DNA of 63,688 nt, counting the filler, from Octopus bimaculoides (taxonomy: Eukaryota), in the NCBI RefSeq assembly GCF_001194135.2. It is 5 parts of 5 records of this genome, joined end to end, with 100 filler letters (N's around TTAATTAATTAA, not from the genome) between each part and the next. Parts side by side here need not be neighbours in the genome. Positions count along the whole stretch, not along the records: positions 17,186 to 28,818 come from NC_069006.1; 4 more parts are not named here. One strand, 5' to 3'. Made by a program: the position numbers and the translations under genes. The notes beneath the pieces were generated by a model, which searched no databases, was not told the origin of the DNA, and worked only from the letters and a program-made list of their open reading frames with translations. This document shows, piece by piece, positions 17,186 to 28,862 of this stretch (position 1 is its first letter; every line of letters begins with the position of its first letter).

Positions 17186-17226
<41 letters not shown>

Positions 17227-17715
17227 TCTGTGTGTGTGTGTGTGATGTTGAAAAAGTAGAACACTAATGCTGTTAAGCTTTTTACAAAAAAATGCCAAGC
17301 ATTCAACTCTGACACCAAATAAGAAGTGACTCCACAATGTAACACACACACATATACATACATACATTCAAAGTCAAAATAAAAAAGAAGGGGCTGGAGG
17401 AGCTACCCTTAATTTTCTTTCTATTTGTTTTCCTTTACAGAAAACTTAATTGAAGGAGCTACGGTTGCAGAAGGGAGCAGGCACACTAGATAATTTCCGA
17501 CTCTATTATACAGGGACGCCATATAAGTAAATATATGGCTGACAATAGCTTAACTGGGCGAAACTTCGAAGTCACTGTCAACAATATACTTGTTGAGGAA
17601 TTAATTTGTACTCAACAAAAGTACAGAGCAACCCCCTTCGATTAATATAAAATTGTTTTTATTATAACTGAACATAAAAACAAACATTAACACATGTGTA
17701 TGCGTATGCGCGTGC

Positions 17716-17756
<41 letters not shown>

Positions 17757-17844
17757 ATATATACACACACATGCGTGTGTATATATAAATATATGTGTAT
17801 ATCGAAGAGAGAGACATGTACATATGTACGAGTACACACACACA

Positions 17845-18060
17845 CCTTTCATCTATTACTTGTTTCAGTCATTAGACTGCGGCCATGCTGGGGCACCGCC
17901 TTGAACAATTTGCTTTGGGTCGAATGAGTCCACAGAAGTACTGGCTTTTTGTTAAGCCTACTACTTATTCTGTAGGTCTCACGTCTACACACACACACTA
18001 TGGATGTATATATGTATATATATATATACATATATATATATTTATTGTAAAAAGAAAATA
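17845..18060 (-). mobile_element. SINE family A, 3' part
   Basis: tacttgtttcagtcattagactgcggccatgctggggcaccgcc is the reverse complement of the family A tail. Confidence 0.75.
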
Positions 18061-18780
18061 TCAACAAAACCGAAACACAGGACGGGACACAGGGTGAGAG
18101 GAGAAAGAGAGAAGACGATCTTGGGCTTACCTTGGCATGACACAAGGAATGGCGGAAGACGGTGACAAGGCGGATATTAAAAACACAAACATAAATATAC
18201 CCCATCCAACACACGTTCAGGGTGCCATTTGTTTCTCGAACTCATAACAGTTGAAACTATTCTAAATTAGAGCAACTACAATGGAATTTAAGCTTCAAAT
18301 ATATCCCAACTACATTATTTCACATGCCGTGGGTGGTGTTTGTTTGGACGGGGGTACAAACCTCCACGAGACTCTGGGGTTTGTTGGTTCGCCACCAGCC
18401 AATACCCTGGGGAAGGGGATGAAAATGGCGATCACGGGGGTATACCCCAGTTTATAGTCATAAATATACAACGATATTACACACACACATCCCGGACGAG
18501 CCCCGATGTAATATCCATTCCTTTATTTTTACTGAAGTTGCCCCAGCATGACCACAACCTTAAGGCTGAAACGAATAATATATACACAAATATCTACTAT
18601 ATACATACACGATATATTTATATCACACACACATACACACAAAGGCGTGTGTGGATATGTATGTGTATGTATGTATGTATATGTGTATGTATACACACAC
18701 ATATATATATGTATATACATACGTATATATATATATATATATATATATACATACGTATATATATATATATATATATATAC

Positions 18781-18976
18781 ATCATCATCGTCGTTTAACG
18801 TCCGCTTTCCATGCTGGCATGGGTTGAACGATTTGACTGAGGACTGGTGAGCTAGAGGCTGCACCAGGCTCAATCTGATTTGGTAGAGTTTCTACAGCTG
18901 GATGCCCTTCCTAATGCCAACCACTCCGAGAGTGTAGTGGGTGCTTTTACGTGTCACCGGCACGAAGGCCAGTCAG
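18781..18976 (-). mobile_element. Retroposon 3' end with (GAT)n tail (RTE-related tail)
   Basis: Reverse strand: ggttggcattaggaagggcatccagctgtagaaa..gcatggaaagcggacgttaaacgacgatgatgat. Confidence 0.7.
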
Positions 18977-19315
18977 TAATTGCTATGTATAAACATTATA
19001 TATACATATAAGTTATACCTGAACATTATATGCATCATCACCATTGCTTTGAGGTAATTTTTTCCATGTTTGCATTGGTCAAGCGAAATGTGAGCAGATG
19101 ATCTATAACAGGGTGCCCTTTCTGTCGCCAACACTCGTTTATTTGCTTGTTTCTCAGTAAGATATTTCCCGAAGTCTTTCGAACACGAACAGAGGCTGGA
19201 CATGTTTTCATGGATGATTTCAAATAAAAGACACCGATTGTATGACAGTGACATTTGATTACACACTCAGCCTGCAATTTTGAGACAGAAACACAAAACA
19301 CTCACACGTATGTGT

Positions 19316-19384
<69 letters not shown>

Positions 19385-19440
19385 TGAATGTACCAATTAC
19401 AGAAAGTGTTTGCGTATATATAAATTCACAATACATGCAT

Positions 19441-19475
<35 letters not shown>

Positions 19476-20878
19476 CACGTATGTGTATACTATATACGCA
19501 CATATATACAGGCATACATACATACATAAAACACGCATATATACGTACTATATATATATATATATATAACGTAAGATCGCCTATATATATACATACATAC
19601 ATACATACATACACACACATACTATATATAGAAATATATATACGTGCTATATATATGCACGGATATATACGTACAAAAAATGCATGCATATTTGAACGCA
19701 TATATACGTACGATGTACGCACGCATATATGCATACAATATATATACACGCATTAATATATCTATATATATATTACGTTTATTTTATTCCAAGAGGTCAG
19801 CATCTTTCAACCTGTGTTGCATCACTCTTTCAATAGTCTGATGGTGGTGGTGGTGGTGGTGGAGGGAGAAGAGAGAGGGGGAGGGGGTGAAAGACCGACT
19901 CATCTTTTTGACTCTCTCAAAAGGCACGGATCAACAAGTTCTTCTTCCTCCCTCCTGCTTTTCGTTTTTAAAAATATTTCATTTTTTTTCTAAAGCTGTC
20001 GATATTAGCATTTCGTTTCACTACAAGCTCAAAATCAACATCGTCTTCACTAGAATTATACGAACTAATAACAGTAGTAGTAGCAGCAACAATAGTAGTT
20101 GTAGTAGCAGTAGTGTTAATTTAGTAGTAGTAGGGGGTGGTTGAAGGAATAAGGTATGTTTTAGTTGTGTGTGGTGCAGTCCGTGTTGAGAATAACAGAT
20201 CGGGCAGGATCTGTCTATAAAGTTATTGGGATTTTCTTCGTTTATTTATTCGTTTAATCTTTGCTGAATTCCACGCAAAAGATAGGATATAACATAATAT
20301 AACGATGCAAAACACACAGAATAAAGGATTTTGACCATGAATACACAAAAATCGGGAGCTACTAAATACGTATTGCAGGATAATAATTAAAAAATAAAGA
20401 AAGAAAGCATATGAACTGCGCCAGTATCAGGGAGCAAAAAGAAAATATCTTCTCTTAAGTTTGTCACATCCCTATAAGAATTTCAGGGTATATTTGCACG
20501 GGGAAAAGTTTTTCAAAAAAAATGGTAATAAATCTAACTGTTTGATACAAAAGATCTAAGTGAATATATATATGCGCGTGTGTATGTGATTTTATATTTA
20601 TATNNNNNNNNNNNNNNNNNNNNNNNNNNNNNNNNNNNNNNNNNNNNNNNNNNNNNNNNNNNNNNNNNNNNNNNNNNNNNNNNNNNNNNNNNNNNNNNNN
20701 NNNNNNNNNNNNNNNNNNNNNNNNNNNNNNNNNNNNNNNNNNNNNNNNNNNNNNNNNNNNNNNNNNNNNNNNNNNNNNNNNNNNNNNNNNNNNNNNNNNN
20801 NNNNNNNNNNNNNNNNNNNNNNNNNNNNNNNNNNNNNNNNNNNNNNNNNNNNNNNNNNNNNNNNNNNNNNNNNNNNNN

Positions 20879-20923
<45 letters not shown>

Positions 20924-21268
20924 GAAATGTGTGCATGTGAAAAGTATGCTGTCCACAAGATTTTGGGATTATATTAATCTGCAAACCGTGCAGTAGATAT
21001 ATCTATCTCCATCTACAAAAGCATCAGCAGGCCGTAAAATTGTGCAGTACAGTGCATATAGAGTGAACGGGTGGGATGGTGGTAGATCGCTGGATGCAAT
21101 AAGACGACGACGACGACAAGTAGTAAGCTTACTACTAGAACACACAGATTGGGGGGAAAACATCATCGCAGTGTGTGTGCGACAAGGGAAGGCATTGAGA
21201 AATAATGCAACCGTTTCACTGGTTGTTATTGGGGTTAAGGGATTGTTATATATATTCTTTTTGCTTAC

Positions 21269-21430
21269 CTCAGTATCACGTATTTCCTTTTGAGTAATTT
21301 GTTCATTGGGGGCACACTGGGTGCGAAGGCCGTACAAATGTTTGGCTGTGAAGTCTATCATACTCTGAACTGTGCTGCAGGTCTGGATGGCGTGTTCAAC
21401 AGACCACTCCTGCCCTGATTCGCAAGACAT
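21269..21430 (-). CDS. KSR: Kinase suppressor of Ras (KSR1/2-like), coding exon 1 (N-terminal CC-SAM/CA1 region)
   Basis: Translates MSCESGQEWSVEHAIQTCSTVQSMIDFTAKHLYGLRTQCAPNEQITQKEIRDTE (54 codons), then the donor GAG|GTAAGC. Matches the vertebrate KSR2 N-terminus as I recall it (..[41 protein letters not shown]). ATG context is cgaaaATG. Downstream exons not found in window. Confidence 0.9.
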
Positions 21431-21771
21431 TTTCGATCTCTAAGCTTCAACATGCCATAGCAGTATTCTCTGAGGGATAATCTCAGTTCACTGTTGTGAA
21501 AGAAGTCATGTTGGTCGGCGGAAAGCCCGTAAAAACAAGTGATTAACACCGAGTGCAGGCTGACAAAAACTCTGCACAGATCAAATACGCCATGTTGAAA
21601 TTGTCACTTCTCGCGAGAACGTGTTGCGCCACTTAAACGAGACTTACCAAAGTTTTACCGGGAAAATCGTGATCACAGCTTCAACACCAAGCACCTTGTA
21701 TATTTACGTCTGTCTCCTCTCTTTTGCATCCTTATTTAGTCGATCCGTAACTATATTTTTTTAAATATAAC
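21431..21771. promoter_or_regulatory. Compact bidirectional promoter/5' leader region shared by KSR (-) and RFC5 (+)
   Basis: 341 bp between divergent ATGs, CpG-richer than the flanks. Contains palindrome TTCTCGCGAGAA (21608-21619), YY1-like CGCCATGTT (21588-21596), and E2F-like GGCGGAAA (21517-21524) and CCGGGAAAA (21658-21666). Confidence 0.7.
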
Positions 21772-21809
21772 ATGGACGGAGGCAACAAGGAAAAATCAAA
21801 CCTTCCATG
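21772..21809 (+). CDS. RFC5: RFC5 coding exon 1 (MDGGNKEKSNLP+TG)
   Basis: ATG at 21772; ends CCA TG|gtaaat. Joining to exon 2 restores the RFC box II motif LPWIEKYRP. Confidence 0.92.
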
Positions 21810-22439
21810 GTAAATATATTTCCCTCGTGTCTTACTTATAATGTGTAAATTATGTTTATATATATCCAATGTTGCGAGGTTTCTAATTTGAAAACATTAG
21901 CATGTGATCGTCAACTATTCCATATTTCTAATGTTAACATCATATTTTATTTACCTGAACCTTGTTAAAACACTTCTATGGGATGATTAGGATTATAAAT
22001 TTATTGAAGTTTAATTGGCAAAACGACAGAGCGAAACTATCAGTTTATTTTATAACGTTTATCGTTTTCAATTCTCGTATCAGTCATTTTGGCGATTTAT
22101 TAGTTTTGGCTACGTATATACTATTATGCATGTAGTCGTCCACTAAAAGAAGAAATAACCTTATATTCCAACAAAATAAACCAATATTTATAGAAATTGG
22201 AACTACGTATACTCGAGTGCCCGTGTATTTTAACCATCAATTTGACCCAAGAATGTGGTATCTGGTATTGCAGACCAAGTTTTCACATTTTCGTTAAGTG
22301 TAGCTATAGGTATCGAGTTAGAATGGGTACCAAGCTGTTATTTATTTATTTTACTTGTTTGATCTGCAAGAAGGAGTTTGTTCATTATTTTTGTTGGCCC
22401 TCCACAACTGGAGGAAACCCACACGGTTAATGTTAATTT

Positions 22440-23100
22440 TGAATAGATGCAAATTGACGATCGCTGCAGATTAAGACTTCCAGATGGCGACCCTGGGAAG
22501 TAAGGCGTGGGCGAAGTTGTTAGTGTTGAGAGGTTGTGGTGGACCCAGTTTGGATGATGAGGGGAGAAAGGAAGGGTATGAGTCCGAAGTACCTGAGTGA
22601 AGGTAACAAAACTAGGTAGCTTCGGGGTGCCATGGCTAATGTAATAGCGGTGAAAAACAACAGAGTGGATAGAACACGTCTGTTGAGAAGCAACTTCATA
22701 CCAATTAGTCGGGTGACCCCTTTTTCTTGTAGTCTGGAATTTGAGTGCATATGTCAGTAGCAGCATCGCCCCAGTTGTGTGAGCTGTCACCAATGGTAAA
22801 GTTCTATTTGAGCTTTGTAGAAGGTTTGGGCTGAAAGTTAATTGTTTCTGACCTTGAAGAGGGAGGTCAGTCTTTGTCCTATTATGAAGATATGCAATCA
22901 CCAGGGAAGAGGTCCTCAGTGATGGTAACCTTGCAGGGTTCTAGCTGCATATTATTGAAGGGTCGTGGATGGGTTCTGATATTGTGAACGCTGACATGAT
23001 CTCCACATTTTGAGGGCTGTTCGTGACGTCAGTGCAGGTTGGAAAGGGTTTAAGTTGTATTTGGACAATGCTTGCTTGGTTGTGGAAGATTGAGCAGGAA
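22440..23100 (-). mobile_element. Possible highly decayed APE-type LINE fragment in RFC5 intron 1
   Basis: GC-richer block; weak endonuclease-like remnants (FTIGDSSHNWG, compare IxGDFNAHxxxWG; later ..NW..). Confidence 0.3.
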
Positions 23101-23304
23101 CAGAGTGATACCATCTGCAATAGGGGTGGGCTTTGTTAGGGATAACAGTATGTAGGTCGCTGGCGAGTAGCTAGAAAGTTAAAAGATAAAACCGAACACC
23201 TAGGTAGGTCTATGACTCATCAATTCAAGAGTTCCTTTCTGATTGTGCTGTGGCCAGATCCACCATCCATTGCCAGTTCATCAGGCCTGTTGTGACTTAT
23301 TTTT

Positions 23305-23445
23305 GCTAGGTAACTTAGCGGTTTGGCAAAAGCGACCGATAAAATAAGTACTAGGCTTCCAAAGAATAAGTCCTGGGGTCGATTTGCTCAACTAAAGGCG
23401 GTGCTCCAGCATGGCCACAGTCAAATGACTGAAACAAGTAAAAGA
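23305..23445 (+). mobile_element. SINE family A, 3' part
   Basis: gtaacttagcggtttggcaaaagcgaccgat..ggtgctccagcatggccacagtcaaatgactgaaacaagtaaaagag. Confidence 0.85.
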
Positions 23446-23678
23446 GTATGTTTGCACTCACACTCTCACTCACTCTCATGCACACACTCACTCACACACA
23501 CACACACATATCCATACATGTGCTCTCTCTCTTACTCTTACAACCCCTCTCATACGCACCCCTCTTATGTACACACATGCACACACACACACATACACAC
23601 ACAAAGTGGGAGAAATGTTTGGAAACCTTTCATTGGTTTATTGATGTATTTTCTTTCTTTCTTTCTTTCTTTCTTCAG

Positions 23679-23743
23679 GATTGAAAAATACCGCCCCCAA
23701 AACCTTGAGGAATTGATTTCTCATAATGACATTATTAATACAA
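23679..23743 (+). CDS. RFC5: RFC5 coding exon 2 (W-IEKYRPQNLEELISHNDIINT)
   Basis: ttcag| acceptor after a pyrimidine tract, |gtaagt donor; 65 nt; phases match neighbouring exons. Confidence 0.97.
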
Positions 23744-23799: not shown

Positions 23800-23950
23800 T
23801 CTTCTTTCAACTGGTTTTGGAAAATAATGTCCAAGTGGTTTTGGGTTCAAATCCTTTGCTTAACACATTGGTCACATGTCTTCTGTTGTTTGAGGCTGAC
23901 CAAATCCTTATCTGTGGATTTGGTTGATGGAAACTGAAAGAAGCCTGTCA
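23800..23950 (+). mobile_element. SINE family A, decayed 5' part
   Basis: gggttcaaatcc..tgaccaaatcctt..ggatttggttgatggaaactgaaagaagcc. Confidence 0.65.
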
Positions 23951-24485
23951 CATTTTTGTCCAGATACATTTTGGTCACACCTTGTATGTAGTAGTAGTAG
24001 TAGTAGTAGTTGCAGTGATGAGAAATAAACAAACTCTAGGTTAGTCCAAATATGTTTGTGACCTATTTTAACTTCTAAAGACAGCCACTAATGTATTTGT
24101 TCTGACCAGGCAATCTGCGACTGTTCCATTATAAAGCTACAGCTTTCCAACCAGCTCAGGGTTATCTCTATTTGGTGTCTCCTATTAAGGAAAAATAAAG
24201 AGCCAGAAATGTATCTAAGAGTCTATCAGAAGGCTGCACAGGTGCCGCTGAATGTCTTTAGCATAATAAGGGGCAAGAAAAGCAAGGGAGACAACCCAAA
24301 TATTTTAACCTGCAGAATGTGCAATACTAAAGACTATTGTTTTTAGTTGTCGCAGCACATCGGCTTATGTTATTTATTTATTTGATTATAGCAGTTCGTT
24401 AGCAATGTATTATCGTTTGATTAAAAAACAAAAAACATTTAATTTGGCTTCCTTTTTTTTATTATTAATTTTTTTTTTTTTTCAG

Positions 24486-24622
24486 TCAAGAAATTTGTCA
24501 ATGAAGATCGTCTACCTCATTTACTTTTTTATGGTCCTCCTGGTACAGGAAAAACCAGCACTATCCTTGCAGTTGCCAAACAGATTTATTCCCCTAAGGA
24601 GTTCAATTCAATGGTCCTTGAG
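24486..24622 (+). CDS. RFC5: RFC5 coding exon 3 (Walker A GPPGTGKT)
   Basis: [46 protein letters not shown]; ttcag| acceptor; non-canonical donor GAG|gcaagt; 137 nt. Confidence 0.96.
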
Positions 24623-24831
24623 GCAAGTCATATATTTCACTAGGCCACAAGCCTTCACATATTAATATAAACAATTCCTCAAGAGTTTTGAATTTCATTT
24701 TAGGTGCTGGATCTTAAACAACTTCTTTACCTCTTTATTTTCCAATCAGCTTTAAGTAATTTGAATTGTTGTGTTCTGTTCCCGTTTGTGGCCCCAGCTG
24801 GTGACTATTGTATGTTTTGTTGTATTTGCAG
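24623..24831 (+). other. GC-AG intron, RFC5 intron 3
   Basis: GAG|GCAAGT donor is required to keep the conserved MVLE-LNASD frame; 209 nt. Confidence 0.88.
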
Positions 24832-24911
24832 TTGAATGCCTCTGATGACCGTGGTATCGGAATTGTGCGAGAAAATATTCTAAGTTTTGCCAGTACAAGA
24901 ACAATTTTCAA
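24832..24911 (+). CDS. RFC5: RFC5 coding exon 4 (LNASDDRGIGIVRENILSFASTRTIF)
   Basis: ttgcag| acceptor, |gtatgt donor; 80 nt; RFC ELNASD motif. Confidence 0.97.
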
Positions 24912-24980: not shown

Positions 24981-25100
24981 TTTCAGCCATGTTGATAGTT
25001 GAGTGATGATATTTCCAAGTACACCAATTACTATTGGTATCACGTCTACTTTCTTCATTGACCACAACTATCTTATGTCCCACTTCAAATTGTCATATAG
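24981..25100 (-). mobile_element. RLE-type non-LTR fragment in RFC5 intron 4
   Basis: YDNLKWDIR*LWSMKKVDVIPIVIGVLG..LSTWLK is the typical C-terminal RLE motif of R4/Dong-like elements. Confidence 0.7.
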
Positions 25101-25104
25101 GTAG

Positions 25105-25460
25105 AGGTGTGGATGTGTTGTAAGAAGCTTGCTTCTCAACTACTTAGTTCTGGGTTCAGTCCCACTGCATGGAACCTTGGGCAAATGGCTTCTACTATAG
25201 CCTTGAACTGACCAAAGCCTTGTGAGTGGATTTGGTAGACAGAAACTGAAAGAAACCCATCATGTATGTGTGCACACATGTCTGTATCTGGATTGGGCAC
25301 TGCATTGTGTTCTTGAGCAAAACACTTCATTTCATGTTTCTGCAGTTCACTTAGCTGGCAAAGATGAGTAATCCTGTGACACACTGGCGTCCTGTTCAAG
25401 TGAGGAATTTATACTCCATGGAAACCAGGAAACCAGCGCTTATGAGTCGGTATGACTTGA
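25105..25460 (+). mobile_element. Adjacent SINE fragments: family A 5' half, then family C central domain
   Basis: aagaagcttgcttctcaac..gggttcagtcccactgc..; then tgtgttcttgagcaaaacacttcatttca..cttagctggcaaagatgagta. Confidence 0.7.
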
Positions 25461-25556: not shown

Positions 25557-25630
25557 GTCAGGCTTTAAGTTGGTCATTTTAGATGAAGCAGATGCCATGA
25601 CACGAGATGCTCAGAACGCACTTAGAAGAG
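25557..25630 (+). CDS. RFC5: RFC5 coding exon 5 (Walker B DEAD)
   Basis: K-SGFKLVILDEADAMTRDAQNALRR; ttacag| acceptor, |gtaaat donor; 74 nt. Confidence 0.97.
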
Positions 25631-25797
25631 GTAAATTAGCAAATATTTACTAACAGTCCACCCTGCTGGGTGCTTTCCTCAAAAGCTCTTTTCCAGCATG
25701 GAAAGTGGAAATAAAAACGATGATGACATATGTATGTATATAGATAGAGACACAGATACATACATATATATTTATATATAATACATACATACAATAT

Positions 25798-26175
25798 GGG
25801 TGCAGGTGTGGCTATGTGGTAAGAAGCTTGCTTCCTAACCACAAGGTTCTGGGTTCAGTCCCACAGCGTTACACCTTGGGCAGGTGTCTTCTATAGCCTT
25901 GGGCCAACCAAAACCTTGTGAGTGGATTTGGTAGGCAGAAACTGAAAGAAGCCTGTTGTATATATATATATATATGTGTGTGTCTGTGTTTGTTCTCCCT
26001 CTACCGCTTGACAACCAGTGTGTTTCTGTCCATGTAACTTAGCAGTTTGGCAAAAGAAACTGGTTGTGTAACTACCAGGCTTTAAAAAAAAAATGCACTG
26101 GGGTTGATTCATTCGACTAAAATTCTTCAAGGCAGTGCTCCAGCATGGCCACAGTCTAATGACTGAAACTAATAT
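25798..26175 (+). mobile_element. Full-length SINE family A in RFC5 intron 5
   Basis: Colinear with the 12491-12900 copy, including the internal (TA/TG)n. Confidence 0.88.
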
Positions 26176-26387
26176 AAGAATATATGTACTTGCATACAAC
26201 CATAGCCATTAACGAAGAGAGAGAGAGAGATGGAAGGAGAGTTGCCAGTTTGAATTCATTCTGTGATGTATTGTTCTTAGATTTCCTTGACCCTTCTCTG
26301 TCTCACCGTTTCCATCTTTTAATTCTTCTTTACTCACTAAAATCCATTAAACTTTGAATTCGTTTCCTTCTATTTTTCTCCCTTTAG

Positions 26388-26547
26388 TTATCGAGAAATT
26401 CACAGAGAACACCAGATTTTGCATCATATGTAACTACCTATCCAAGATTATTCCAGCATTGCAGTCACGTTGCACACGCTTTCGGTTTGCTCCTCTTTCC
26501 ACAGACCAAATGATGCCACGTTTAGAATACGTCATTAAACAAGAAGG
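26388..26547 (+). CDS. RFC5: RFC5 coding exon 6 (SRC arginine finger)
   Basis: V-IEKFTENTRFCIICNYLSKIIPALQSRCTRFRFAPLSTDQMMPRLEYVIKQE; tttag| acceptor, |gtaaaa donor; 160 nt. Confidence 0.97.
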
Positions 26548-27503: not shown

Positions 27504-27585
27504 GGTGAATGTGACCCAGGATGGCATGAAAGCTATTGTTACTTTGGCATGTGGTGATATGAGGCGTTCTCTCAATATGCTTCAG
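27504..27585 (+). CDS. RFC5: RFC5 coding exon 7 (sensor-2 GDMRR)
   Basis: G-VNVTQDGMKAIVTLACGDMRRSLNMLQ; tgtag| acceptor, |gtaagt donor; 82 nt. Confidence 0.97.
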
Positions 27586-28032: not shown

Positions 28033-28162
28033 AGTGCTTCAATGGCTTTTGATAAAGTGACAGAAGATAACGTTTATTTATGTGTTGGACATCCTCTCCG
28101 TAAAGACATTGAAAATATTGTCCAGTGGCTGTTAAACTCCAGTTTCACAGAAGCTTATAAAA
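28033..28162 (+). CDS. RFC5: RFC5 coding exon 8
   Basis: SASMAFDKVTEDNVYLCVGHPLRKDIENIVQWLLNSSFTEAYK; ttcag| acceptor; donor |GTATCCTT (U12 consensus); 130 nt. Confidence 0.96.
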
Positions 28163-28580
28163 GTATCCTTGTTTGGTATGTGTAAAAGTGCATGTGTGTG
28201 TGTATGTGCATGGACAACAGATGTTAAATGATGATGATGATACACACACATTGTTTTTAGGTTGAGTTATATAATTTTACATTAGTGCTACTCCCTAGTT
28301 TTGTAGTGTCCAAGTTTATTATTCTCTTACAAGAATATTATCGCCAGTGACTTCAAAGTTTCAGCTAGCTAAGCCATCATTGGACTGTGATGGCTTAGCT
28401 GGCTGGTAAGTACCTAAAAATAGACAGTGGGTTTGGAGGTGCGATTTTGATTGAATAAAACCCTTCAAGGTGATGCCCCAGCATGGCCACAGTCCAATGA
28501 CTGAAACAAGTGAACAATGAAAGATAATAATTAATGAGTTTTCTCTAATTATTACCTAATTTTCCTTGACATTGCTGTAG
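28163..28580 (+). other. U12-type (minor spliceosome) GT-AG intron, RFC5 intron 8
   Basis: 5' splice site GTATCCTT (28163-28170); branch site TTTCCTTGAC (28561-28570) ends 10 nt before the exon; no polypyrimidine tract. Confidence 0.92.
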
Positions 28581-28658
28581 ATATTCTCCAGTTGAAGGTT
28601 GCCAAAGGTTTGGCTCTCCAAGACATTCTCACCGAAGTTCACGTTTACGTACATCGAA
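28581..28658 (+). CDS. RFC5: RFC5 coding exon 9 (last exon found; gene 3'-incomplete)
   Basis: N-ILQLKVAKGLALQDILTEVHVYVHR, similar to the RFC5 LKTLKGLALHDILTEIH region; preceded by a U12 branch point and gtag|; |gtaaga donor; 78 nt. Confidence 0.95.
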
Positions 28659-28862
28659 GTAAGAATTATTTCATTTTCTTTCATTATTATTATTATTTGA
28701 TATTTTCCTCATTTTTGTCATTGAATTTTTTTTTTTTCAATTAACAAAGCTGACTGCATCTTTAGATATTTGGCTTGCTAGAAATAGCAGCACATCTTCT
28801 GCAAATAACATCATTATTNNNNNNNNNNNNNNNNNNNNNNNNNNNNNNNNNNNNNNNNNNNN

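What the first reader, a model, noticed from the sequence alone, without database searches (positions are those of the whole stretch)
21269..21809. KSR and RFC5 head-to-head with 341 bp between start codons: possible ancient microsynteny
Seen: KSR exon 1 (-) and RFC5 exon 1 (+) diverge from a 341-bp interval in an otherwise gene-sparse, repeat-laden region, and the interval holds no recognisable TE. Established (from memory, to verify): human KSR2 and RFC5 are divergent neighbours on 12q24 (NOS1-KSR2-RFC5-WSB2) but tens of kb apart, and the paralogon on 17q11 has WSB1-KSR1-NOS2. Inference: the pair may predate the protostome-deuterostome split, and here a Ras-MAPK scaffold and a clamp-loader subunit share one minimal promoter, suggesting co-regulation of mitogenic signalling and S-phase machinery.
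Basis: partly seen in the sequence, partly recalled or inferred. Interest (0 to 1): 0.8.

Follow-up and report, generated by a model that had tools for sequence, protein, structure and literature searches.

The report
Ancient KSR–RFC5 head-to-head gene pair
In this octopus sequence the first exons of a Ras-pathway scaffold gene (KSR) and a DNA-replication clamp-loader gene (RFC5) point away from each other across 341 bases, and the same arrangement occurs in snails, oysters, brachiopods, starfish, acorn worms and fish, so it is a real and very old example of an already known kind of conserved gene pair.

Summary
KSR exon 1 lies on the minus strand at 21430-21269. RFC5 exon 1 lies on the plus strand at 21772-21809. 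Exactly 341 bp separate the two ATGs. The window is Octopus bimaculoides.

Both gene identities hold. The KSR exon matches Pfam SAM_KSR1_N at E=2e-12. The nine RFC5 exons in the piece give 281 aa that score 475 bits against human RFC5, against about 219 bits for RFC4/RFC2.

The microsynteny idea is strongly supported. KSR and RFC5 sit head-to-head, with ATGs 186-1455 bp apart, in a second cephalopod, Lottia, oyster, a bivalve-like contig, Lingula, Asterias, Saccoglossus and a teleost. In Capitella the genes are still linked but KSR is inverted. Arthropod samples have lost the pairing.

The interval carries a conserved motif module: GCCATNTTG (YY1-like), then TCTCG, an E-box or TCTCGCGAGA, then CGAGA, then an E2F-like site. 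The lophotrochozoan core occurs in 5 of 9 taxa and in none of 1000 shuffled sets.

An oyster RNA-seq contig joins both spliced mRNAs through the intergenic DNA.

Not tested: transcription start sites in octopus, co-expression, and any functional coupling of MAPK signalling with S phase. Conserved 5'-5' pairs with bidirectional promoters are a known class (Irimia et al. 2012). I found no paper naming this pair.

The parts
21269..21430 (-). KSR exon 1 coding part (54 codons). It encodes the N-terminal helical hairpin of the CA1/CC-SAM region. The phase-0 intron follows ...IRDTE.
   Evidence: The exon-intron boundary is conserved in Lottia, oyster, Lingula, Asterias, Saccoglossus and fish.
21263..21268 (-). 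Splice donor GTAAGC of KSR intron 1.
   Evidence: sequence read directly.
21431..21771 (.). 341-bp divergent intergenic interval, the putative bidirectional promoter plus both 5' leaders. It holds 47 CpG per kb against 19 per kb for the whole piece.
21431..21618 (-). KSR-proximal part of the interval. Apart from the exon, it is the only non-coding DNA of the piece that aligns with a second coleoid cephalopod (81% over 363 bp including the exon).
21447..21458 (-). Tiny upstream ORF ATGGCATGTTGA (MAC*), 28 nt before the KSR ATG and identical in both cephalopods. It matters only if it lies inside the KSR 5' UTR.
21588..21597 (-). YY1-like element. It reads CGCCATGTTG on the plus strand and CAACATGGCG in the KSR sense. 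It lies 158 bp from the KSR ATG.
   Evidence: The same element lies 128-158 bp from the KSR ATG in 8 sequences.
21609..21618 (.). Exact palindromic CGCG element TCTCGCGAGA. This is its only occurrence in the window. Bivalves, Lottia, Saccoglossus and Asterias have the palindromic E-box TCACGTGA at the corresponding place.
   Evidence: Its function in vertebrates is described in PMC6192621.
21637..21643 (+). ACGAGAC. This is the right arm of the conserved TCTCG-N18..24-CGAGA inverted arrangement.
21658..21665 (.). E2F-like site CCGGGAAA (TTTCCCGG on the other strand, 7 of 8 matches to TTTSSCGC). The second cephalopod and oyster have the same site. Other taxa have TTCCCGCG or GCGCCAAA.
21772..21809 (+). 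RFC5 exon 1 (MDGGNKEKSNLP plus TG of Trp). A phase-2 intron follows, with donor GTAAAT.
23679..23743 (+). RFC5 exon 2.
24486..24622 (+). RFC5 exon 3, carrying the Walker A motif GPPGTGKT. It is followed by a GC-AG intron with donor GCAAGT.
24832..24911 (+). RFC5 exon 4.
25557..25630 (+). RFC5 exon 5, carrying the Walker B motif LDEADAMT.
26388..26547 (+). RFC5 exon 6, carrying the SRC motif.
27504..27585 (+). RFC5 exon 7.
28033..28162 (+). RFC5 exon 8.
28581..28658 (+). RFC5 exon 9. The remaining exons lie beyond the piece, in or past an assembly gap.

Best explanation
The interval is the shared, TATA-less divergent promoter region of the single octopus KSR gene and of RFC5. The head-to-head arrangement was inherited from at least the last common ancestor of protostomes and deuterostomes.

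Shown:
- Both first exons are genuine.
- The same pair, in the same orientation, with ATGs 186-524 bp apart (1455 bp in a teleost), occurs in three lophotrochozoan groups, an echinoderm, a hemichordate and a vertebrate.
- The interval holds an ordered motif block. On the RFC5-sense strand it reads GCCATNTTG (a YY1-type site in the KSR sense), then TCTCG, then TCACGTGA or TCTCGCGAGA, then CGAGA, then an E2F-like site.
- The block keeps a nearly constant distance from the KSR ATG, while its distance to the RFC5 ATG varies.
- In oyster both spliced mRNAs are joined through the interval in an RNA-seq contig.

Inferred:
- One nucleosome-free region fires in both directions.
- The start sites are so close, or overlapping, that a breakpoint between the genes would damage at least one promoter. 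That would explain why the pair has survived.
- The YY1-like end mainly serves KSR. The E2F-like end mainly serves RFC5 and gives it proliferation-linked expression.
- The central palindrome serves both. In cephalopods it is the CGCG element, which drives bidirectional transcription in vertebrates.

Whether KSR output is thereby tied to the cell cycle is an open possibility, not a result.
For: Exon identities.

Head-to-head KSR/RFC5:
- O. bimaculoides annotation.
- Lottia, M. gigas, Lingula, Asterias, Saccoglossus, Nelusetta.
- A second cephalopod and a bivalve-like contig.
- First-exon translations checked.

Motif module:
- Positions.
- An unbiased 8-mer count puts TCACGTGA (5 of 8 taxa) and GCCATCTT (4 of 8) on top. 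The maximum in 200 shuffles was 4, reached in 5 of them.
- GCCATNTTG-N5..30-TCTCG-N15..25-CGAGA occurs in 5 of 9 independent taxa and in none of 1000 shuffled sets.
- The YY1-like site lies 128-158 bp from the KSR ATG and 58-274 bp from the RFC5 ATG.
- TCTCGCGAGA occurs once in the window and is expected 0.00 times.

Cephalopod footprint: only the exon and the KSR-proximal interval align. The introns do not.

Oyster RNA contig L008: one unbroken 440-nt block covers KSR exon 1, the intergenic DNA and RFC5 exon 1, with spliced exons on both sides.

Literature: the CGCG element induces divergent transcription (PMC6192621). 5'-5' conserved pairs are attributed to shared promoters (PMC3514665).
Against: - No start-site, chromatin or expression data exist here for octopus. 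Promoter sharing is inferred from geometry and conservation.
- The arrangement is dispensable. Capitella has KSR inverted, with another gene now facing RFC5, and none of the motifs in that interval.
- A crab RFC5 has no KSR within 10 kb. An arthropod-like KSR exon has no RFC5 within 1.7 kb.
- Contig L001 keeps the YY1-like/TCTCG/CGAGA block next to KSR but shows no RFC5 within 10 kb. This suggests that part of the module is simply KSR's own promoter.
- In vertebrates the spacing has grown to 1.4 kb in the filefish, and to tens of kb in human from memory, yet linkage persists. Tight sharing is therefore not the only force.
- The motif patterns were defined after looking at the sequences.
- The KSR-sense leader contains several upstream ATGs, which is odd for a long 5' UTR.
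Confidence: 0.7

Rival explanations
1. Passive retention. The pair is ancestral but is kept only because a spacer of a few hundred bases offers almost no target for rearrangement breakpoints. The two genes have independent, merely abutting promoters and no regulatory coupling.
For: - The pairing was lost or rearranged without obvious consequence in Capitella and in arthropod samples.
- L001 keeps the KSR-side motifs without RFC5.
- Vertebrate spacing has expanded while linkage remains.
Against: - Orientation and sub-kilobase spacing are kept in six phylum-level lineages.
- An ordered motif block is conserved in DNA that is otherwise unalignable.
- The central element is a palindrome of a type shown to fire both ways (PMC6192621).
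- Oyster transcripts meet or overlap in the interval.
Confidence: 0.2
2. Functional coupling. The shared promoter exists to tie the dosage of a Ras-MAPK scaffold to E2F/MYC-driven S-phase gene expression, and this coupling is what selection preserves.
For: - E2F-like sites and a CACGTG E-box lie in the shared interval in most taxa.
- Both mRNAs are present in the same oyster RNA-seq run.
Against: - There are no expression data.
- The E2F-like sites sit on the RFC5 side and the YY1-like site tracks KSR, which fits a division of labour.
- Lineages that broke the pair are viable.
- In a human endothelial experiment, deleting a KSR2 enhancer changed KSR2 expression but not RFC5 expression (PMC12713192).
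Confidence: 0.15
3. Annotation artefact. The minus-strand ORF is a KSR-like fragment or pseudo-exon and is not the used first exon of octopus KSR.
For: - Only exon 1 lies in the piece.
- The 1116-aa GenBank model at this locus has no Pfam hits on record.
Against: - The exon starts with ATG and ends at a consensus donor at the intron position conserved from octopus to fish.
- It is 91% identical in a second cephalopod, while the flanking intron is unalignable.
- The orthologous oyster exon is spliced into mRNA.
- The GenBank KSR coding sequence starts at this ATG.
Confidence: 0.03

Closest known systems
Human 12q24 locus NOS1-KSR2-RFC5-WSB2, and its paralogon WSB1-KSR1-NOS2-NLK on 17q11
   Same: - It has the same two orthologous genes as neighbours. 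The human order is stated in PMC12713192.
- The divergent orientation, with WSB2-like and Ig genes following RFC5, was confirmed here in a teleost.
- The gnathostome ksr1 neighbourhood includes wsb1, nos2 and nlk (PMC10343441).
   Different: - The octopus spacer is 341 bp between ATGs, against 1455 bp in the filefish and tens of kb in human (human figure from memory, not checked here).
- Octopus has one KSR gene.
- No WSB or NOS gene lies within 10 kb in any invertebrate locus examined. A TRAF-like gene follows octopus RFC5.
Conserved ancestral microsyntenic pairs (CAMPs) in 5'-5' orientation, e.g. HSPE1-HSPD1 (Irimia et al. 2012, PMC3514665)
   Same: - It is a deeply conserved adjacent pair of unrelated genes.
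- The divergent orientation is conserved.
- The spacer is very short, the signature of a bidirectional promoter.
- The conservation is attributed to shared cis-regulation.
   Different: - The pair is not named in the main text, and the supplementary lists are not held. No searchable paper links KSR and RFC5 by synteny.
- HSPE1/HSPD1 act in one complex. KSR and RFC5 have no known functional link.
CGCG-element (TCTCGCGAGA) bidirectional promoters of vertebrate CpG islands (Mahpour et al. 2018, PMC6192621)
   Same: - The exact 10-mer sits in a CpG-enriched interval between divergent genes. A TATA-like run nearer RFC5 is not conserved in the second cephalopod.
- The same 10-mer is present in the second cephalopod and in the filefish KSR-RFC5 spacer.
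   Different: - The element has been described as conserved in vertebrates. Here it is in cephalopods, where it occupies the slot held by TCACGTGA in other invertebrates.
- The binding factor and the methylation state in octopus are unknown.

Membership tests
KSR (kinase suppressor of Ras) | N-terminal CA1 region: helical hairpin/coiled coil preceding the SAM domain (PF20406). | tested here: met
   PF20406 at E=2e-12, above the curated cutoff. Aligns to KSR1 CC-SAM structures 5vyk and 2lpe.
KSR (kinase suppressor of Ras) | SAM, C1 (CA3) and C-terminal pseudokinase (CA5) domains in the same gene. | not testable with these tools
   These exons lie outside the piece. The GenBank model starting at this ATG is 1116 aa with no Pfam record. 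Orthologous loci in Lottia, oyster, Lingula, Asterias, Saccoglossus and fish show PF20406 + PF13543 + Pkinase in the gene at the same position, plus C1_1 in all but Lingula.
RFC5 (human nomenclature; yeast Rfc3) | AAA+ clamp-loader small subunit with Walker A (GPPGTGKT), Walker B (DEAD) and SRC motifs. | tested here: met
   All three motifs are present in the 281-aa conceptual product. It aligns end to end with 6vvo_C.
RFC5 (human nomenclature; yeast Rfc3) | Closest to RFC5 rather than to the RFC2, RFC3 or RFC4 paralogues. | tested here: met
   475 bits to human RFC5 and 311 to yeast Rfc3, against about 219/214 to human RFC4/RFC2 and 103 to human RFC3. Database relatives are named RFC5. No tree was built.
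Conserved ancestral microsyntenic pair | The same orthologous pair is adjacent in lineages on both sides of a deep node. | tested here: met
   Mollusca (3 classes), Brachiopoda, Echinodermata, Hemichordata and Vertebrata. Annelida are linked but rearranged.
Conserved ancestral microsyntenic pair | Conserved relative orientation. | tested here: met
   5'-5' in all except Capitella.
Bidirectional promoter (divergent genes with start sites under 1 kb apart) | Divergent first exons less than 1 kb apart. | tested here: met
   341 bp between ATGs.
Bidirectional promoter (divergent genes with start sites under 1 kb apart) | Transcription initiates in both directions from the interval; activity is shared. 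| not testable with these tools
   There is only indirect support: the oyster RNA contig spans the interval. No octopus start-site or reporter data exist here.
CGCG-element promoter | Consensus TCTCGCGAGA in a CpG-rich promoter. | tested here: met
   Exact match at 21609-21618, expected 0.00 by shuffling. The interval has 47 CpG per kb against 19 per kb for the piece. A TATA-like run at 21699-21706 is not conserved in the second cephalopod.
CGCG-element promoter | An unmethylated element drives divergent Pol II initiation. | not testable with these tools
   This needs methylome, CAGE or reporter data.

The most novel reading that the evidence does not exclude
The KSR-RFC5 spacer is a cis-regulatory module more than 550 million years old. 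Its motif grammar (YY1-type site, a TCTCG...CGAGA dyad around an E-box or CGCG palindrome, then an E2F site) has been kept between molluscs, brachiopods and, in part, deuterostomes. It shows that the CGCG bidirectional core-promoter element, so far described as a vertebrate feature, also works in cephalopods. It links expression of the Ras-MAPK scaffold to the proliferation programme.
Probability: 0.25. Interest if true: 0.65.

Novelty: new member of a known kind. Interest (0 to 1): 0.45.

Why it matters
Gene order in animals is mostly scrambled, so pairs that stay together across phyla point to regulatory constraint. This pair is a clean and compact case. It has two unrelated, well-studied genes, a spacer of only 0.2-0.5 kb, and recognisable motifs in conserved order. 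It also offers natural 'experiments' in which the pair was broken (Capitella, arthropods, contig L001) or stretched (vertebrates). That makes it a convenient system for testing whether shared promoters really cause microsynteny conservation. It could also show whether vertebrate core-promoter elements such as TCTCGCGAGA act in molluscs. It does not change what is known about KSR or RFC5 function.

Tried and rejected
- The bacterial-type promoter/terminator scan of the interval does not apply to a eukaryote and was ignored.
- Rfam and tRNA scans of the piece found nothing.
- A sliding CpG observed/expected profile did not set the interval apart, because ACGT-containing microsatellites inflate the ratio elsewhere. 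I used CpG density instead.
- A single-sequence search with KSR exon 1 gave only three hits. A profile search gave 197 short unannotated exon fragments that could not be placed taxonomically.
- Metagenome scans with the KSR exon profile failed or found nothing. A scan with an arthropod-like fragment gave two short contigs without RFC5.
- tblastn of the octopus RFC5 against L001-L004 found no RFC5 exons. No exon-1 candidate was found in 10 kb of L001.
- The last RFC5 exons of O. bimaculoides were not found within 10 kb downstream.
- PDB holds no NLK structure, so the name of the kinase next to RFC5 in Lingula and Capitella rests on my memory of the NLK sequence.
- The Irimia et al. supplementary pair lists are not held.
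- Cnidarian, sponge and amphioxus loci could not be reached.
- ORFs in RFC5 introns gave no Pfam match.

Full report
**What is in the window.** The piece is from Octopus bimaculoides. The RFC5 product assembled from it is 100% identical to the GenBank protein on chromosome record CM046626.1.

On the minus strand, 21430-21269 is an ATG-initiated exon of 54 codons that ends at a GTAAGC donor. It matches the KSR-specific Pfam family SAM_KSR1_N (E=2e-12, above the curated cutoff). It also aligns with the coiled-coil part of the KSR1 CC-SAM structures 5vyk and 2lpe.

On the plus strand, 21772-21809 encodes MDGGNKEKSNLP plus two bases of a Trp codon, followed by GTAAAT. Guided by tblastn, I defined nine exons up to 28658, all with AG acceptors. 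All donors are GT except one GC donor, in intron 3.

The 281-aa product carries the Walker A, Walker B and SRC motifs. It scores 475 bits against human RFC5. Yeast Rfc3 scores 311 bits, human RFC4/RFC2 about 219/214 bits and human RFC3 103 bits.

The distance between the two start codons is exactly 341 bp (21431-21771).

**Is the interval special within the piece?** The surrounding introns are full of (TA)n and (ATAC)n arrays and copies of a SINE-like repeat. None of these touches 21250-21830. The interval has 47 CpG per kb against 19 per kb for the piece.

When the piece is compared with a 4.2-kb genomic contig from a second coleoid cephalopod (L002), only 363 bp align, at 81% identity. L002's RFC5 N-terminus resembles the RNA-derived cephalopod sequences P0006-P0011. 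The aligned stretch covers KSR exon 1 and the KSR-proximal 190 bp of the interval, and it ends at a shared TCTCGCGAGA. The introns do not align.

**Is the pairing old?** I looked up the genomic context of RFC5 orthologues. A gene with the full KSR domain set lies immediately upstream of RFC5 on the opposite strand in every case below. The domain set is SAM_KSR1_N, SAM_KSR1 and protein kinase, with C1 as well in all but Lingula. The figures are base pairs between the coding starts.

| Taxon | Gap (bp) |
|---|---|
| Lottia gigantea | 296 |
| Magallana gigas | 214 |
| Lingula anatina | 416 |
| Asterias rubens | 524 |
| Saccoglossus kowalevskii | 186 |
| Nelusetta ayraudi (filefish) | 1455 |

- In the filefish, RFC5 is followed by a WD40 gene on the opposite strand and then an Ig-domain gene. 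This matches the human order KSR2-RFC5-WSB2-VSIG10 given in PMC12713192.
- I checked the KSR first-exon translations. The intron position after ...EIR..E is conserved from octopus to fish, as is the phase-2 intron inside the Trp codon of RFC5 ...NLPW.
- Two unannotated contigs carry both first exons head-to-head. The second cephalopod has 256 bp between the ATGs. A contig whose RFC5 N-terminus resembles that of the protobranch bivalve Solemya has 261 bp.

The arrangement therefore predates the protostome-deuterostome split. Cnidarians and other outgroups could not be examined.

**Exceptions.**
- In Capitella, KSR is still within 10 kb but on the same strand as RFC5. A UVB_sens_prot gene now faces RFC5.
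- In the crab Petrolisthes there is no KSR exon within 10 kb upstream of RFC5.
- An arthropod-like KSR exon-1 contig has no RFC5 exon within 1.7 kb.
- The 409-kb ENA contig L001 has a lophotrochozoan-like KSR exon 1 but no RFC5 exon in the 10 kb upstream.

**What the interval contains.** I extracted the spacers in the RFC5-sense orientation and found an ordered set of short elements.

1. GCCATNTTG. Read in the KSR sense this is CAANATGGC, the core of the YY1 consensus (established knowledge).
2. TCTCG, 9-17 bp further on.
3. A palindrome. It is TCACGTGA in Lottia, oyster, the bivalve-like contig, Saccoglossus and Asterias. It is TCTCGCGAGA in both cephalopods.
4. CGAGA(C/T). With element 2 it forms an inverted pair spaced 18-24 bp apart.
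5. An E2F-like site near RFC5. It is TTCCCGCG in Lottia, Lingula and the bivalve-like contig. It is CCGGGAAA in both cephalopods and oyster. It is GCGCCAAA in Asterias and the fish.

In the octopus window these elements lie at 21588-21597, 21609-21618, 21637-21643 and 21658-21665.

An unbiased count of all 8-mers across eight taxa puts TCACGTGA (5 taxa) and GCCATCTT/CCATCTTG (4 taxa) on top. In 200 dinucleotide-preserving shuffles the maximum was 4, reached in only 5 of them. The composite GCCATNTTG-N5..30-TCTCG-N15..25-CGAGA occurs in 5 of 9 independent taxa and in none of 1000 shuffled sets. That pattern was defined after inspection. TCTCGCGAGA occurs once in the whole window, with an expectation of 0.00.

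The YY1-like element lies 128-158 bp from the KSR ATG in all eight sequences that have it. Its distance to the RFC5 ATG ranges from 58 to 274 bp. It also stays with KSR in L001, where RFC5 is absent. I read this as follows: the YY1-like end belongs mainly to KSR, and the E2F-like end mainly to RFC5.

**Transcript evidence.** This exists only for oyster. A 6.5-kb contig assembled from run SRR4419958 (L008) contains the intron-less KSR coding sequence on one strand and the intron-less RFC5 coding sequence on the other.

Aligned to the genome, it has one unbroken 440-nt block covering KSR exon 1, the 214-bp spacer and RFC5 exon 1, with spliced exons on both sides. So both first exons are used, and the whole spacer is represented in RNA. 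This is what overlapping or abutting divergent transcripts would give. An assembly joined by rare unspliced or antisense reads cannot be excluded.

**Mechanism.** The best reading is a compact bidirectional promoter with interdigitated elements. Its indivisibility has protected the pair from rearrangement.

The central palindrome in cephalopods is the CGCG element. In human cells this element is sufficient to drive divergent transcription from TATA-less CpG-island promoters (PMC6192621). The E2F-like sites fit RFC5's role as a replication gene (established knowledge).

The stronger idea, that KSR dosage is deliberately tied to S phase, has no support beyond motif content. The repeated loss of the pairing counts against it. 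So does a human experiment in which perturbing a KSR2 enhancer left RFC5 expression unchanged.

**Comparison with what is known.** Conserved 5'-5' gene pairs with short spacers were described systematically by Irimia et al. 2012 and attributed to shared promoters, so the kind is known. Their pair lists are not available to me. Full-text searches found no paper that links KSR and RFC5 by synteny or by a shared promoter. I therefore class this as a new, well-documented member of a known kind.

The conserved motif order across phyla and the CGCG element in a cephalopod are its most interesting features.

**Extended linkage.** In Lingula and Capitella a MAPK-family kinase gene lies just beyond RFC5. 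It contains PDRPIGYGAFGVVW, and I recognise it from memory as Nemo-like kinase. PDB has no NLK chain to confirm this.

In gnathostomes nlk lies in the ksr1-wsb1-nos2 neighbourhood (PMC10343441). This fits an ancestral KSR-RFC5-NLK block. After the vertebrate genome duplications it would have been split between the 12q24-type and 17q11-type paralogons.

Noticed in passing
window 24623-24628: RFC5 intron 3 has a GC donor (GAG|GCAAGT) and a normal AG acceptor, so it is a GC-AG intron.
   Followed up: partly
window 28658-28818; L005 16973-19002: The GenBank O. bimaculoides RFC5 model (309 aa) reads through the exon-9 donor into the intron, to a stop at 28744. O. vulgaris RFC5 has 52 further C-terminal residues that tblastn did not find within 10 kb downstream. 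An assembly gap of about 2 kb of N starts right after the piece, so the last exon(s) are probably in the gap.
   Followed up: yes
window 17846-17911, 18532-18586, 23310-23449, 23837-23978, 25095-25290, 25794-25986, 26034-26183, 28467-28521: Copies of a SINE-like interspersed repeat (shared core ...CCAGCATGGCCACAGTC.AATGACTGAAAC...) lie in both orientations in KSR intron 1 and in RFC5 introns. They were not classified, because no TE library was available.
   Followed up: partly
window 22186-23185: A stretch of about 1 kb in RFC5 intron 1 has raised GC content (0.42-0.45) and a strong G-over-C skew (+0.3). It carries a 187-aa minus-strand ORF (22338-22901) with no Pfam match. It may be an unclassified repeat.
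   Followed up: partly
window 21447-21458 (minus strand): A four-codon upstream ORF, ATGGCATGTTGA, lies 28 nt before the KSR start codon and is identical in the second cephalopod. The surrounding 190 bp is as conserved as the coding exon.
   Followed up: partly
L008 5126-5565 (Logan SRR4419958), against L007 9616-10054: An oyster RNA-seq contig joins the spliced KSR and RFC5 mRNAs head-to-head through the unbroken 214-bp spacer. Five blocks of the collection hold 5-10 kb contigs carrying the intron-less RFC5 coding sequence, so the join may be reproducible.
   Followed up: partly
L009 1-10000 (Capitella teleta): KSR is split into two gene models and lies on the same strand as RFC5. A UVB_sens_prot (PF04884) gene is now head-to-head with RFC5, 636 bp away. 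None of the conserved motifs is in that interval.
   Followed up: partly
L010 24103-25331 (Lingula); L009 18168-24197 (Capitella): A MAPK-family kinase gene with PDRPIGYGAFGVVW lies just downstream of RFC5 in both species. I recognise it from memory as Nemo-like kinase. In gnathostomes nlk is in the ksr1 neighbourhood, which suggests an older KSR-RFC5-NLK block.
   Followed up: partly
L001 9300-10231 (ENA ERZ24900295 ctg5612l): A lophotrochozoan-like KSR exon 1 has the GCCATTTTG...TCTCG...CGAGA block 142 bp upstream, but no RFC5 exon is recognisable in the 10 kb upstream. The organism is unknown.
   Followed up: partly
window 20604-20878: A run of N (assembly gap) flanked by (TA)n lies inside KSR intron 1. 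Long (TA)n and (ATAC)n arrays fill 17186-19750.
   Followed up: no
L005 19395-26973: The gene after RFC5 in O. bimaculoides is a TRAF-like gene (RING, zf-TRAF, MATH) on the opposite strand. It is not a WSB homologue.
   Followed up: no
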